Sequence record: OZ195776.1
Direction: 5' to 3' (one strand)
DNA length: 64,000 bases
A program made the position numbers and the translations under genes. The stretch's first letter is position 1. Every line of letters begins with the position of its first letter. This document shows positions 6,700 to 63,292 of this stretch, piece after piece. The notes beneath the pieces were generated by a model, which saw only the letters and a list, made by a program, of their open reading frames with translations, ran no database searches and was not told where the DNA came from.

Positions 6700-7359
6700 A
6701 TGGCAGAACAATTATTAATCGAATCTTGGGGCACTCCTTACCACGTGGATGATAGCGGCGTTTACGCACTTATCGAAGCGAAGGTTGAAAGCGATGGCCC
6801 TATGTACATCGAAGGCGTTTTCATGCAAGCAGATGTCGTAAACCGTAATGGTCGTCGATATCCAAAAAAAGTTATGGAAAAAGCCGTTGATAAATACATT
6901 ACAGAACAGGTGGTAACGCGACAAGCCCTTGGCGAGTTGAATCACCCTTCCCGTTCTAACGTTGATCCAGCAGAAGCTGCAATTCGAATTACTGAATTGT
7001 GGTGGGATGGGGCCAATGTAATGGGTAAAGCAATAGTACTGGACACTACCAAAGGTAAAGAAGTCCAAGCGCTTATCAAAGGCGGTTGGGTACCTGGAGT
7101 TAGCTCTCGTGGTCTCGGATCTGTTAAACAGGTTGGTGGCATTAACGAAGTGCAAGATTTCAGACTAACCGTTGGCGTAGATGTCGTGTGGGGACCTAGT
7201 GCTCCTAACGCTTATGTACGCGCAGTAAATGAAAGTACCCAACATCCTGCTGAAAAAGCGGCAATCAATACACCAATTTCTGAAAATTCTGACGAAAATT
7301 CTGCAAATTTGGACGCTGATTTCGCAAAACTGGCGGAAACATTAGAAAAACTCTTATAA
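6700..7359 (+). CDS. 21: Prohead protease (gp21)
   Basis: IEGVFMQADVVNRNGRRYPK, ALGELNHP, GVSSRGLGS, VDVVWGPSAPNAYV. Confidence 0.97.
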   Translation: MAEQLLIESWGTPYHVDDSGVYALIEAKVESDGPMYIEGVFMQADVVNRNGRRYPKKVMEKAVDKYITEQVVTRQALGELNHPSRSNVDPAEAAIRITELWWDGANVMGKAIVLDTTKGKEVQALIKGGWVPGVSSRGLGSVKQVGGINEVQDFRLTVGVDVVWGPSAPNAYVRAVNESTQHPAEKAAINTPISENSDENSANLDADFAKLAETLEKLL

Positions 7360-12046: not shown

Positions 12047-12054
12047 CATAAATA
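12047..12054 (+). promoter_or_regulatory. Late promoter variant CATAAATA
   Basis: One mismatch to TATAAATA, 25 nt upstream of 12080. Confidence 0.6.
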
Positions 12055-12079: not shown

Positions 12080-12673
12080 ATGATTGAATTTATCACAGAG
12101 CGCAAAAGCGGCGACAAGTGGTATCAGGGTAGTCGTGGAGAGGTTGCTCACAACGTTCGTAAGATCGGTGTGAAGAAAGGCGGTGTGAAAGGAGCTATTC
12201 TTTCAAAGTCAGCGAATCTCATTGCCAAGGTGGCAGCTACGGGTACTTTGGGACGCGAGAATCGCAAAATCCAACAAGCGCAAACCAAAATGGAAGCGGC
12301 TGGCGTAAGCGCACTTCGTTATATGAACTACCTGGAAGCATCTATCAAATCTGACCGTCCTCGCGATGAAATTGTGAAGTCTGCGAAGCTATTGAAAGGC
12401 TATATTTCGGACACGAATAAGGCAGTACAAGAAGTTGTACGTCTAATTGACCGTTACCAACGACTTGACAACGAAGAGAAGCGTTCGCGTGGACTTGCTG
12501 GTGCAATCGTAGGTGCCGACGAGTTTTCGAAATACGACTTCCAAGATTTCTACCGAATGATGAACGACATCGAAGATGTTGCATTCAACTTAAACAAAGC
12601 AGCAACCGCTGCAATCACCAACGATTACGAATACGCATTGCGTCAAATGCATGCAGTTAAAGGTATTTTATGA
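12080..12673 (+). CDS. Putative internal head protein
   Basis: N-terminus MIEFITE resembles gp21-cleaved targeting leaders (T4 Alt MELITE); late promoter upstream. Confidence 0.55.
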   Translation: MIEFITERKSGDKWYQGSRGEVAHNVRKIGVKKGGVKGAILSKSANLIAKVAATGTLGRENRKIQQAQTKMEAAGVSALRYMNYLEASIKSDRPRDEIVKSAKLLKGYISDTNKAVQEVVRLIDRYQRLDNEEKRSRGLAGAIVGADEFSKYDFQDFYRMMNDIEDVAFNLNKAATAAITNDYEYALRQMHAVKGIL

Positions 12674-13197
12674 TTGAGTTTATCGCAGAACAGCGTCGTT
12701 TAAAGACGAGAAAAGGAAGCGCGATTAAGCGTTCCAAATGGGGCGTGGGCAAGGATATTGGCGGAAGCTTGTATGTTCACGTGAATTACGTGCCAGCGGA
12801 TTTTCGTAATATGGTAGATGAAGCACGAATGAAGATTTTGATTGAACATCCAACGTTTGATCCAAACATCGTGCGTATCGACTACAAGAAAGGAAGCGTG
12901 GCGTTTTACGACTCGCCGGAATTTGACAACTCAAACGAACCTGCAGCAGGTACGATGATTGTTGTTAAAGATGGTGTAGTTGCAAAACCAAGAGTGGTTA
13001 AACAGATATGGCATCACAAATGGCTATGGGTAGGAGACGACTATCGTGGTTTCAACGCGGAAGAAGCGTTCAAGCGAAGCGAAGAATGGTTGTCCAAGGA
13101 TACCGAGGATAATCCACTACCATTTGCAAAAATTGGCAACCGCCAGACTTGGAAAGACTGGCTGGCTGACAATAGTTTGAAAGAATCTGCTGGTTAG
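12670..13197 (+). CDS. Putative internal head protein with a domain resembling DNA-phosphorothioation-associated proteins
   Basis: Leader MIEFIAE; motifs GKDIGGSLYVH, NIVRI, VAFYDSPEFD, QIWHHKWLWV. Confidence 0.5.
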   Translation: MIEFIAEQRRLKTRKGSAIKRSKWGVGKDIGGSLYVHVNYVPADFRNMVDEARMKILIEHPTFDPNIVRIDYKKGSVAFYDSPEFDNSNEPAAGTMIVVKDGVVAKPRVVKQIWHHKWLWVGDDYRGFNAEEAFKRSEEWLSKDTEDNPLPFAKIGNRQTWKDWLADNSLKESAG

Positions 13198-14297
13198 TAG
13201 TTCTTCAACAATCCTTCAATAATACGGATACGTGCTTCTGCAAGTGCGTGTCCGTATTCCGGACCTGGTTCAACATCCAGCTTAATTCCAAGCGTGTCGG
13301 TCTTGACTCGTTTCGCAAACGCAGTGATCAGAGGTACGCGACAAGCACTTAACGCCATGTCCAACTCATCGTGAGCATTTCCCCACAATCCAATCGAACG
13401 AAGTACGCGGTACCAAGTACCAGAATCAGTACTAACAAACCCATCTGACATTAATTCATCCAAGACAATCGTTTTCTTAGCAACGCTGATGTATTTCTTC
13501 GGCGCATTTAAGAACTGTAACAATTCAACAAATTCCAATGACGCCATAAACACCTGCTTGTGACCACGGTACGTTTTGCTTGCGTGAATTGCATGAATGC
13601 GATCCCACACTCCAAGTTCCGGAATGAATCCGAATTCAGCCAACAGATCGAAGTACACGATTGGGTCATTTGCATCAAGAGCTTTTTCAGTCTCAACCCA
13701 AATACGCTCAGAAGATACTTTGTGCAACATACCATCACGAACCATTTGACGACACAGTTCCTTCGTCTCTGGAGCAACCGTAAATCCGAGATGGTAGTAA
13801 CGAGCTGCAAATCGAGCACAACGCAACACTCGTAACGGATCTTCTGCAAATGCATCTGAAACGTGACGAATCACCTTGTTTTTCAAATCTTTCAGACCTC
13901 CAAATGGGTCGATTAGATTAGTTGAATCATCTGGGAACGTATCGCAGAATCCCAAAGTCCATTCGCTACCTTTTTCAACTGCCATTGCGTTGATTGTAAA
14001 ATCACGACGACGTAGGTCATCTTCAATGGAAACGTTCTGAACATCACACGTGAAGTCACCGTAACCATCACCAATCGAACGTTCTATTCGAGCCAATGCC
14101 CATTCGTTACCATCAGAATCCAACCAAACAGGAAAGTCAGCACCGATAGTTGGACCGAAACGATCTACCATATCGTTAATCGAAGAGCCAGTTACAACAT
14201 AATCGATGTCTTTTGGACGGTAGCTGTAACCACCACCACTTTTCAAAATAGTGTCACGGACAAATCCACCCACTACGTATTCTGCATACTTTATCAT
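13194..14297 (-). CDS. cca: tRNA nucleotidyltransferase (CCA-adding enzyme)
   Basis: VGGFVRD, KDIDYVV, GADFPV, ALAR.ER, EDDLRRRDFTINAMA, DPFGG, EDPLRVLR.ARFAAR. Confidence 0.95.
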   Translation of the reverse strand: MIKYAEYVVGGFVRDTILKSGGGYSYRPKDIDYVVTGSSINDMVDRFGPTIGADFPVWLDSDGNEWALARIERSIGDGYGDFTCDVQNVSIEDDLRRRDFTINAMAVEKGSEWTLGFCDTFPDDSTNLIDPFGGLKDLKNKVIRHVSDAFAEDPLRVLRCARFAARYYHLGFTVAPETKELCRQMVRDGMLHKVSSERIWVETEKALDANDPIVYFDLLAEFGFIPELGVWDRIHAIHASKTYRGHKQVFMASLEFVELLQFLNAPKKYISVAKKTIVLDELMSDGFVSTDSGTWYRVLRSIGLWGNAHDELDMALSACRVPLITAFAKRVKTDTLGIKLDVEPGPEYGHALAEARIRIIEGLLKNY

Positions 14298-62848: not shown

Positions 62849-63292
62849 TTATTCTGAAAGAATGAATAGAACTGAATCATCTTGGTCTTGCGTGCGTAGA
62901 GTGTGGTACCCGTACTGCTTACCAAAACGTAAAGCCATTCTTTTGTATAATGATACACGACTTCGGTCCGCTTTAGAACCCTCAAATCGTATCGTATCAA
63001 TATCGTAACCTTGTTGCATTGATTTATTCAAAAATGCGCTAATTCCAGCTACGACTGTTGAGAATACCATAGGAGCATTGCCTGTTCCTGTCGCATCCCA
63101 TCTAATTTTGTTGCCATCTCGGAGGCTAAATTCGACATCAAGCGTACCTTCGTATTCGGTCAAATATATTCCGTACATACGGTCGTCTATTTTGAACGTT
63201 CCGGTCCACTCTTCGTCGTATTGCCACTTCCAAGTGATTTGAGCTGGTCGTGAATTAAACGACTCAGTCAAATGTTCTCTGAACGATATCAT
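62849..63292 (-). CDS. Putative internal head protein
   Basis: MISFREHLTE leader, GGAGG RBS, CATAAATA late promoter at 63311-63318. Confidence 0.7.
   Translation of the reverse strand: MISFREHLTESFNSRPAQITWKWQYDEEWTGTFKIDDRMYGIYLTEYEGTLDVEFSLRDGNKIRWDATGTGNAPMVFSTVVAGISAFLNKSMQQGYDIDTIRFEGSKADRSRVSLYKRMALRFGKQYGYHTLRTQDQDDSVLFILSE

What the first reader, a model, noticed from the sequence alone, without database searches (positions are those of the whole stretch)
12670..13197. Packaged protein resembling a domain of DNA-phosphorothioation-associated proteins
The motif order GK.IGGSLYVH / NIVRI / VAFYDSPEFD..NEPA / QIWHHKWLWV.DDY recalls the repeated domain of the dnd-linked putative methyltransferase family (TIGR04096-type: GK...LYVH, NIIK, SFL.YP.FD...HP, ILHRKE.FV...Y). 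A stand-alone copy with a capsid-targeting leader could act as an injected decoy or inhibitor against Dnd/Ssp phosphorothioation defence, which is common in vibrios. The family match is from memory.
Basis: inference. Interest (0 to 1): 0.65.

Follow-up and report, generated by a model that had tools for sequence, protein, structure and literature searches.

The report
Head-packaged copy of a phosphorothioation-linked domain
A T4-like Vibrio phage appears to package in its head, and probably inject, a small protein made of one uncharacterised domain that bacteria (including one in six Vibrio-family species sampled) keep next to their DNA-phosphorothioation genes, so it is a candidate new counter-defence protein.

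Summary
ORF 12670-13197 (+) of Vibrio phage D479 (KVP40-like) encodes 175 aa: a 7-residue T4-type capsid-targeting leader (MIEFIAE), then one copy of a ~150-aa domain I call X. X has no Pfam family and no solved-structure match, although the model is confident (pLDDT 93).

Profile-profile comparison links X to the repeated domain of TIGR04096 proteins (98.8% probability, E 1.4e-16).

TIGR04096 is tightly linked to phosphorothioation. All 10 sampled Pseudomonadota loci lie beside dndBCDE or sspABCD-like genes. In Vibrionaceae, 31 of 32 carrier genomes also hold DndC or SspB.

X, usually with the same methyltransferase, also sits inside giant phage polyvalent proteins. About half of the complete stand-alone phage copies carry a T4-like leader with an I/L-x-E site.

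Packaging is therefore well supported by sequence but not shown experimentally. An anti-Dnd/Ssp role is plausible (about 0.3-0.4) but untested. The phage clade is only ~20% identical to the host clade. It is conserved in 51 KVP40-like records. It also fuses to RNA- and ADP-ribose-related enzymes.

The phage protein is not a TIGR04096 member: it lacks the methyltransferase and scores 16.7 bits against a 150-bit cut-off.

The parts
12670..13197 (+). CDS of the 175-aa protein: leader plus one X domain
   Evidence: ORF list. Hypothetical protein VPHD479_0014 in the record. phrog_16075, unknown function, E 9e-82. No Pfam family. AlphaFold2 model with pLDDT 93.
12670..12690 (+). Leader M-I-E-F-I-A-E: T4-type capsid-targeting sequence with an I-x-E cleavage site. 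The predicted mature N-terminus is Gln8.
   Evidence: EFIAE is identical to residues 6-10 of T4 IPII/IPIII. The gp21 cleavage motif is L/I-X-E (PMC9026906). The coding pattern for M-I-E-F-x-x-E occurs only twice in the 257,764-bp genome, at this gene and its neighbour. Residues 1-5 of the model are disordered.
12733..13176 (+). Core of the X domain (residues 22-169), homologous to the repeated domain of TIGR04096
   Evidence: TIGR04096 profile positions 321-467 map here. hhalign 98.8%, E 1.4e-16. Alpha+beta fold: beta-beta-alpha-beta4 followed by helices.
12080..12673 (+). Adjacent 197-aa basic protein with the same leader (MIEFITE). Its stop codon overlaps the X start codon (ATGA). Probable co-packaged partner or fellow internal protein.
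   Evidence: phrog_16422, unknown function. Conserved upstream of the X gene in KVP40 as KVP40.0372.
6700..7359 (+). gp21-type prohead protease, the enzyme expected to remove the leader
   Evidence: Annotated as head maturation protease. 46-59% identical to gp21 homologues of T4-like coliphages.

Best explanation
The gene encodes an internal head protein of a T4-like Vibrio phage.

Proposed sequence of events:
1. The 7-residue leader MIEFIAE targets the protein to the prohead core.
2. The gp21-type protease cuts after Glu7. This leaves a basic 19-kDa protein (pI 9.2) that is a single X domain.
3. The protein is packed with the DNA and injected with it, so it acts before any phage gene is expressed.

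X is an ancient, uncharacterised alpha+beta domain. Its conserved polar site (Lys28, Tyr35, His37, Asp86, His115, Lys117) is kept in every context. That points to a specific ligand-binding or catalytic site.

In bacteria, X flanks a class-I SAM methyltransferase (X-MTase-X, TIGR04096). That gene sits beside Dnd or Ssp phosphorothioation clusters. In phages, the MTase-X module is built into giant virion-borne polyvalent proteins.

The most likely role of the solo phage copy is counter-defence at the moment of DNA entry. It would engage the same target as the host X domains (a DNA backbone feature, a ligand or a partner protein) without methylating it. That would blunt phosphorothioation-linked self/non-self discrimination in Vibrio hosts.

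What is shown: the homology, the domain architectures, the genomic linkage, the leader and the protease gene.
What is inferred: packaging, cleavage, injection, and above all the target.
For: Leader and packaging:
- EFIAE is shared with the T4 IPII/IPIII leader.
- The I-x-E motif matches gp21 specificity (PMC9026906).
- The same leader is on the ATGA-coupled neighbour and nowhere else in the genome.
- A gp21 homologue lies at 6700-7359.
- The gene lies 2.8 kb downstream of gp23, on the same strand, beside an inh-like gene.
- In metagenomic T4-like phage L006, the X gene shares the leader MKF..YL(T/I)E with four other genes, one of them an ART-PolyVal gene.
- 27 of 53 complete stand-alone homologues have an [LI]-x-E leader.

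Domain:
- 1121 representative proteins match at E<=0.001.
- The model is confident (pLDDT 93).
- The same residues are invariant in solo, fused and giant proteins.

Link to phosphorothioation:
- hhalign 98.8%, E 1.4e-16 to TIGR04096 X copies.
- 10 of 10 TIGR04096 loci lie beside dndB-C-D-E or Aminotran_5/DUF4007/PAPS_reduct (SspABD-like) genes. Gene roles are taken from PMC12914056.
- In 201 Vibrionaceae genomes, 32 carry TIGR04096. Of these, 31 also carry DndC or SspB, mostly 1.4-14 kb away on the same contig.

Delivery by invaders:
- MTase-X sits within 3,300-4,900-aa proteins that also carry SNF2 helicase, LPD38, LPD3, DarA_C or ART-PolyVal.
- Two such proteins are encoded between phage tail genes and lysis genes.
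Against: - There are no virion proteomics for any KVP40-like phage in the searched literature. Packaging rests on sequence alone.
- No clear T4-type late promoter was found. There is only a CATAAATA 32 nt upstream of the neighbour gene, and exact TATAAATA is not enriched in the window.
- The phage clade is only about 20% identical to the host clade.
- Direct matches to TIGR04096 are far below its cut-off: 16.7 bits against 150.
- The gene is kept in 51 KVP40-like phage records at 60-68% identity. That looks more like a core function than a fast-changing anti-defence gene.
- Other fusion partners are CCA-adding enzyme, NFACT-R, YafQ and Tpt1/PARP-like ARTs. Neighbours include TROVE and Macro genes. 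These point to RNA or ADP-ribose biology.
- The partner methyltransferase resembles small-molecule and tRNA methyltransferases, not DNA base methyltransferases.
- PADLOC has no model for the domain.
Confidence: 0.4

Rival explanations
1. A generic injected nucleic-acid-binding or DNA-protecting internal protein, not aimed at phosphorothioation systems. The basic mature protein rides in on the DNA like other T4 internal proteins or P1 DarA/DarB. It shields the DNA or helps the first steps of infection. The shared domain reflects a common nucleic-acid-binding activity, not a shared pathway.
For: - The mature protein has pI 9.2, with a lysine/arginine-rich arm right after the leader.
- The gene is conserved across the 51 KVP40-like records.
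- The domain occurs in polyvalent proteins of phages that carry Amidase_3 endolysin and holin genes, possibly outside the range of Vibrio-type phosphorothioation systems.
- Solo copies also occur on Vibrio plasmids with no PT genes in the flanks examined (8 kb each side).
Against: - About ten polar residues are invariant across all contexts. That is more than a plain DNA-coating protein needs.
- The host clade shows a near-exclusive link to PT clusters.
Confidence: 0.25
2. An RNA-directed or ADP-ribose-linked effector module. X would bind or process RNA (for example tRNA ends), or an ADP-ribosylated or nucleotide-derived ligand, and would work alongside the phage's CCA-adding enzyme and related repair or take-over enzymes.
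For: - X is fused to complete CCA-adding enzymes with HD domains (P0086, P0122).
- It is also fused to NFACT-R, YafQ, ART-PolyVal and a Tpt1/PARP-like domain.
- The CCA-adding enzyme gene of D479 abuts the X gene, convergent with a 4-nt overlap.
- A TROVE gene lies directly upstream in L006, and a Macro gene directly downstream in L009.
- The partner methyltransferase's structural neighbours include Trm9, METTL6 and Hen1.
Against: - Polyvalent proteins and internal-protein gene arrays combine unrelated effectors by design (PMC5512222). Fusion or adjacency there is weak evidence of a shared pathway.
- In KVP40 the CCA enzyme lies 5 kb away.
- Each of these partners is rare: 1-2 of 60 proteins, against 13 of 60 for the methyltransferase.
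Confidence: 0.12
3. Not packaged. The N-terminal similarity is coincidental or vestigial, and the protein acts in the cytoplasm late in infection.
For: - The leader is only 7 residues, against 10 in T4.
- In KVP40 the homologue starts MSIIFE, a weaker match.
- There are no proteomic data.
Against: - The same leader is found on exactly two adjacent genes in 258 kb.
- Leader arrays occur in related phages.
- 27 of 53 complete solo homologues carry an [LI]-x-E leader.
Confidence: 0.1

Closest known systems
T4 internal proteins IPI, IPII and IPIII (capsid-targeting-sequence proteins; IPI* blocks the GmrSD restriction enzyme)
   Same: A short N-terminal leader ending in I/L-x-E, with EFIAE identical to IPII/IPIII. 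The mature protein is small and basic. The gene lies outside the conserved head genes. The expected fate is packaging, cleavage by gp21 and injection for counter-restriction.
   Different: The mature part shows no sequence or fold relation to them. The leader is 7 residues rather than 10. The target is unknown. The mature domain has over a thousand relatives, including cellular ones, whereas the T4 internal proteins are poorly conserved even among T4 relatives (PMC9026906).
TIGR04096 / dnd_rel_methyl, 'DNA phosphorothioation-associated putative methyltransferase' (architecture X-MTase-X)
   Same: The X domain is homologous, with the same motif order: GK..Y.H, N.V+, P.FD, I(W/L)H(H/R)K, IG....W. 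Some loci also carry a separate stand-alone X-type ORF of 171-180 aa.
   Different: The phage protein has no methyltransferase, and none of this type is found anywhere in the phage genome. It has one copy of X, not two. It belongs to a separate clade with WHHKW in place of LHRKE and an added basic N-terminal arm. It scores 16.7 bits against a 150-bit cut-off.
Polyvalent proteins of phages and conjugative elements, and their solo LPD domains (Iyer et al. 2017, PMC5512222); P1 DarB
   Same: X occurs inside 3,300-4,900-aa proteins alongside SNF2 helicase, LPD38, LPD3, DarA_C and ART-PolyVal. Solo versions lie among phage late or internal-protein genes, as that paper describes for other such domains.
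   Different: X matches none of the Pfam LPD families. The associated methyltransferase is a Methyltransf_23-type enzyme, not the DarB-type adenine methylase.
JSS1_004, the known phage antagonist of DndBCDE-FGH (PMC12345140)
   Same: It is the only characterised phage counter to phosphorothioation-based defence that I found. Its target is the one proposed here.
   Different: JSS1_004 is an early-expressed kinase plus shutoff protein. It is neither packaged nor related to X.

Membership tests
TIGR04096 (dnd_rel_methyl) | Whole-protein score at or above the curated cut-off of 150 bits | tested here: not met
   16.7 bits, E 0.0024; 14.5 bits in the six-frame search.
TIGR04096 (dnd_rel_methyl) | Central class-I SAM methyltransferase domain (profile positions about 1-300) | tested here: not met
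   Only profile positions 322-467 match. No match to the methyltransferase half anywhere in the D479 or KVP40 genomes at E<=1.
TIGR04096 (dnd_rel_methyl) | The repeated X domain (GK..Y.H / P.FD / ILHRKE / IG....W) | tested here: met
   hhalign 98.8%, E 1.4e-16 against N-terminal copies; 94.9%, E 4.7e-8 against C-terminal copies. Phage-family HMM scores 30-41 bits on the four best bona fide members and 6.5-20 bits on the rest.
TIGR04096 (dnd_rel_methyl) | Encoded next to dnd or ssp phosphorothioation genes | tested here: not met
   The phage gene lies in the head/internal-protein region. By contrast, 10 of 10 cellular loci are PT-linked.
T4-type capsid-targeted internal proteins | N-terminal capsid-targeting sequence resembling MKTYQEFIAE | tested here: met
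   MIEFIAE here; the T4 IPII/IPIII leaders were read from NC_000866. The leader is shared with the adjacent gene only.
T4-type capsid-targeted internal proteins | gp21 cleavage motif L/I-X-E at the end of the leader, and a gp21 protease in the genome | tested here: met
   I5-A6-E7. Motif taken from PMC9026906. Protease at 6700-7359.
T4-type capsid-targeted internal proteins | Physical presence of the processed protein in virions, and its injection | not testable with these tools
   No virion proteome of a KVP40-like phage was found.
Polyvalent-protein-associated domains (Iyer et al. 2017) | Occurs inside large multidomain proteins with disparate effector domains encoded by phages or conjugative elements, with solo versions near structural genes | tested here: met
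   architectures; phage late-region context; solo copy in a leader array.
Polyvalent-protein-associated domains (Iyer et al. 2017) | Match to one of the catalogued LPD1-LPD40 models | tested here: not met
   No Pfam family for the solo protein at E<=1. The Pfam families found in larger relatives lie elsewhere in those proteins wherever their positions are known. Not every LPD has a Pfam model, so this is not exhaustive.

The most novel reading that the evidence does not exclude
X is the module that recognises or processes phosphorothioate in a so far unstudied core component of Dnd and Ssp systems: the X-MTase-X gene, present in 31 of 34 PT-bearing Vibrionaceae genomes sampled. T4-like Vibrio phages would then inject a pre-made, methyltransferase-less copy that blocks phosphorothioation-based self/non-self discrimination at the moment of DNA entry. 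That would be the first packaged anti-phosphorothioation protein. The MTase-X modules of giant phage polyvalent proteins would be a second, catalytic version of the same counter-measure.
Probability: 0.3. Interest if true: 0.85.

Novelty: new variant of a known kind. Interest (0 to 1): 0.68.

Why it matters
Three things follow if the reading holds.

1. It would add a new cargo class to the capsid-targeted internal proteins of T4-like phages. Only a few of these have a known target.

2. It defines a large orphan domain family: more than 1,100 sequence clusters, a confident model, and no solved relative. The family is shared by host phosphorothioation loci, giant phage polyvalent proteins and small injected proteins. 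That host-versus-invader distribution is typical of an arms-race module.

3. It exposes the X-MTase-X gene as a nearly constant but uncharacterised partner of both Dnd and Ssp systems in Vibrio. That makes its role directly testable by deletion in the host, phosphorothioate quantification and phage plating. The only phage counter to phosphorothioation defence that I found in the literature is an early-expressed kinase.

Tried and rejected
Searches that found nothing for the protein or the family:
- Pfam: no family for the protein.
- PDB by sequence profile: no match for family A1.
- Foldseek against PDB: best E 0.16.
- VIA-align against 48,161 chains: best Z 3.8, with cystatin/PepSY-like alpha+beta rolls only. 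No solved relative was recognised. This does not prove a new fold.
- BFVD: one real hit, an unnamed 1,232-aa viral protein that contains the domain.
- PADLOC: no model.
- First genome-contig scan with A1: no confirmed locus.

Ideas considered and set aside:
- MTaX1, a methylase-associated domain named in PMC10853773. Not pursued; the X-containing proteins scanned gave no Pfam hit attributable to the X region.
- The RNA-repair reading prompted by CCA-enzyme fusions and the TROVE and Macro neighbours. Kept only as a minor rival, because these contexts pool unrelated effectors.
- A T4 late promoter. Exact TATAAATA is absent near the gene and not enriched in the window. Only a CATAAATA lies 32 nt before the neighbour gene.
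- The nature of the partner methyltransferase. The profile search of PDB gave only generic motif-I matches. Fold searches gave small-molecule and tRNA methyltransferases, which do not identify a substrate.

Literature:
- Searches for TIGR04096 found only a genome-annotation mention.
- No paper on KVP40 virion proteomics was found.

Not run:
- No complex prediction, because I do not claim a specific binding partner.

Full report
**What the window is.** The 64-kb window is identical to the start of Vibrio phage D479 (OZ195776.1, 257,764 bp). D479 is a KVP40-like member of the T4 superfamily, isolated from seawater and oysters. The region upstream of the finding is the T4-type head module:
- portal;
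- prohead core proteins;
- gp21-type protease at 6700-7359, 46-59% identical to coliphage gp21 homologues;
- gp22-type scaffold (PF25623);
- gp23 major capsid protein (PF07068).

Downstream of gp23, on the same strand, lie:
- a 397-aa protein of unknown function;
- a 209-aa protein with weak matches to prohead-protease-inhibitor families;
- a 197-aa protein at 12080-12673;
- the finding, 12670-13197.

A CCA-adding tRNA nucleotidyltransferase gene (13194-14297, minus strand) converges on the finding with a 4-nt overlap.

**The observation.** Twenty-five relatives from a word-based search align over the whole domain.

A direct scan against NCBIfam gave only a weak hit to TIGR04096 (E 0.0024, 16.7 bits, profile positions 322-467 of 478). 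I therefore tested the link in other ways.
- An exhaustive profile search found 1,121 representative proteins at E<=0.001.
- Several of these match both profiles. P0101, for example, scores E 2.6e-45 against the phage family and E 6.4e-13 against TIGR04096 positions 285-451.
- I then fetched bona fide TIGR04096 genes from bacterial genomes (12 of 401 Pseudomonadota genomes). The phage-family HMM scores 30-41 bits on the four best of them and 6.5-20 bits on the rest.
- hhalign gives 98.8% probability, E 1.4e-16 over 147 columns.
- The ESM Atlas structure search independently lists clusters named 'DNA phosphorothioation-associated putative methyltransferase' among the nearest models.

These proteins are built X-methyltransferase-X. 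The N-terminal copy keeps the I-L-H-R-K-E motif. The C-terminal copy has mostly lost it. The one 488-aa member with a single copy keeps the motif.

**The leader.** The protein starts MIEFIAE and its upstream neighbour starts MIEFITE. T4 IPII and IPIII, read from NC_000866, both start MKTYQEFIAE. The T4 prohead protease cuts after glutamate in L/I-X-E, and the first ten residues of IPIII suffice for capsid targeting (PMC9026906).

The coding pattern for M-I-E-F-x-x-E occurs twice in the whole D479 genome, at these two adjacent genes. It occurs once in KVP40, at the neighbour's homologue.

Relatives show the same logic more strikingly. In a metagenomic T4-like phage (L006), the X gene and four other genes all begin MKF/MRF..YL(T/I)E. 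One of the four is an ART-PolyVal ADP-ribosyltransferase. Of 53 complete stand-alone homologues, 27 have an [LI]-x-E leader, and many of these leaders closely resemble the T4 sequence.

I therefore regard packaging and processing as the best-supported inference. It remains an inference: I found no virion proteome for this phage group and no clear late promoter.

**The domain.** The AlphaFold2 model is confident (pLDDT 93, pTM 0.86). After the disordered leader comes a basic arm, then a beta-beta-alpha-beta4 sheet packed on a long helix, then three helices.

It matches no Pfam family and no PDB sequence. Fold searches gave nothing significant: Foldseek E>=0.16, and VIA-align Z<=3.8 with only cystatin/PepSY-type rolls.

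About ten polar residues are invariant in solo proteins, fusions and giant proteins alike. Lys28, Tyr35, His37, Asp86, His115 and Lys117 are also kept in the TIGR04096 clade. This argues for a defined binding or catalytic site, not a mere spacer.

**Where else the domain occurs.** Of the 173 relatives collected in the two searches, 76 are solo (<=230 aa), 64 are mid-sized and 33 exceed 1,300 aa.

Among 60 mid-sized proteins, the commonest partner by far is a Methyltransf_23-type SAM methyltransferase (13 of 60). Rare partners are complete CCA-adding enzymes, NFACT-R, ART-PolyVal, a Tpt1/PARP-like domain, YafQ, GNAT, NlpC/P60 and ParB_N.

In 12 giant proteins, the methyltransferase directly precedes X in the one protein with mapped positions (P0043) and in the alignment consensus. 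Six of the 12 match Methyltransf_23. Partner domains in one or another of them are SNF2 helicase, LPD38, LPD3, DarA_C and ART-PolyVal. That is the signature of the polyvalent proteins of Iyer et al. 2017 (PMC5512222). Two of these giants are encoded between tail genes and the holin/endolysin cassette of phages.

On a Vibrio megaplasmid, X and the methyltransferase half are adjacent separate genes. D479 and KVP40 carry no methyltransferase of this type.

**Is TIGR04096 really linked to phosphorothioation?** Yes, tightly. I examined 10 loci from Pseudomonadota.
- Four lie beside dndB-C-D-E. DndB and DndD give equivalog-level hits, and DndC lies 1.4-4.4 kb away.
- Six lie beside a set of cysteine desulfurase (Aminotran_5), DUF4007, a ~1,100-aa protein and a PAPS-reductase protein. 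That is the SspABCD arrangement as described in PMC12914056.
- Three of those six also have a DndFGH/SspFGH-like trio that ends in an FtsK-type giant.

In 201 Vibrionaceae species genomes:
- TIGR04096 passes its cut-off in 32;
- DndC passes in 24;
- DUF4007 (SspB) is found in 10;
- 31 of the 32 TIGR04096 genomes also hold DndC or SspB, usually within 1.4-14 kb on the same contig;
- only three PT-bearing genomes lack TIGR04096.

The gene is thus a near-constant neighbour of both kinds of phosphorothioation system in the phage's host family. I found no paper that studies it.

Its methyltransferase domain resembles small-molecule and tRNA methyltransferases (Z 12-14). No DNA base methyltransferase appears among the top matches.

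**Reading.** The distribution fits a contested module. The host version sits inside a defence or modification locus. An invader version is delivered with the DNA, either in polyvalent proteins or as a capsid-targeted solo protein. The most economical mechanism is that the injected X engages the same target as the host X domains and so disturbs phosphorothioation-linked discrimination of incoming DNA.

I give the overall explanation 0.4, and the specifically anti-phosphorothioation version about 0.3. The points against it are:
- the phage clade is only ~20% identical to the host clade;
- it has its own methyltransferase partner in phages whose hosts I could not determine;
- the gene is conserved in 51 KVP40-like phage records;
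- some fusions and neighbours point to RNA or ADP-ribose biology instead.

The known phage counter to Dnd, JSS1_004, is an unrelated early-expressed kinase.

**Verdict.** The protein is not a TIGR04096 member, but it shares that family's defining repeated domain. It is best filed as a new kind of cargo for the known T4-type capsid-targeting route. The side result, that X-MTase-X is an unstudied near-obligate partner of Dnd and Ssp systems in Vibrio, may be as useful as the phage finding itself.

Noticed in passing
L023-L035 and L038-L043 (bacterial genomes); not in the window: The TIGR04096 X-MTase-X gene is a near-obligate neighbour of both Dnd and Ssp phosphorothioation clusters: 10 of 10 Pseudomonadota loci, and 31 of 32 carrier genomes in Vibrionaceae. 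It seems unstudied. Its N-terminal X copy keeps the ILHRKE motif, while the C-terminal copy has mostly lost it. The 856-859-aa versions add a further ~190-aa C-terminal domain.
   Followed up: partly
window 12080-12673 (+): A 197-aa basic protein (pI 9.6) with the same MIEFI.E leader. Its stop codon overlaps the X gene's start (ATGA). It is conserved upstream of X in KVP40 (KVP40.0372). It matches phrog_16422, whose function is unknown.
   Followed up: partly
window 13194-14297 (-): A CCA-adding tRNA nucleotidyltransferase gene converges on the X gene with a 4-nt overlap. Elsewhere, X is fused to complete CCA-adding enzymes (P0086, P0122). In KVP40 the two genes lie 5 kb apart.
   Followed up: partly
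window about 62873-63244 (-); L001 5004-5966: The KVP40 and nt-1 homologues of X are 306-320 aa, with an extra C-terminal ~135-aa domain. D479 lacks this fusion but encodes a 29%-identical copy of that domain as a separate small gene near 63 kb (tblastn E 1e-8).
   Followed up: no
L006 6089-16232 (metagenomic T4-like phage): Five genes share the leader MKF/MRF..YL(T/I)E, a probable array of capsid-targeted cargo that includes an ART-PolyVal ADP-ribosyltransferase. A TROVE (Ro60-like) gene lies directly upstream of the X gene, and a CCA-adding enzyme follows the array.
   Followed up: partly
L002 7977-9123 (Vibrio coralliilyticus plasmid p380); L012 (Vibrio owensii): X and the methyltransferase half of a TIGR04096-like protein are encoded as two adjacent genes on a 380-kb plasmid. 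The region consists of many small unknown genes plus an LPD1-domain protein. There are no phosphorothioation genes within the ~8 kb examined on each side.
   Followed up: partly
L044 10001-24616; L045 10001-21898: Giant phage proteins of 4,871 and 3,965 aa that contain X lie between tail genes and the holin/amidase cassette. One phage also carries a diversity-generating retroelement (Mtd_N plus reverse transcriptase).
   Followed up: no
window 12048-12054: CATAAATA lies 32 nt upstream of the 12080 start codon, one base away from the T4 late-promoter consensus. Exact TATAAATA occurs only four times in the window and is not enriched, so the late-promoter motif of this phage group may differ.
   Followed up: partly
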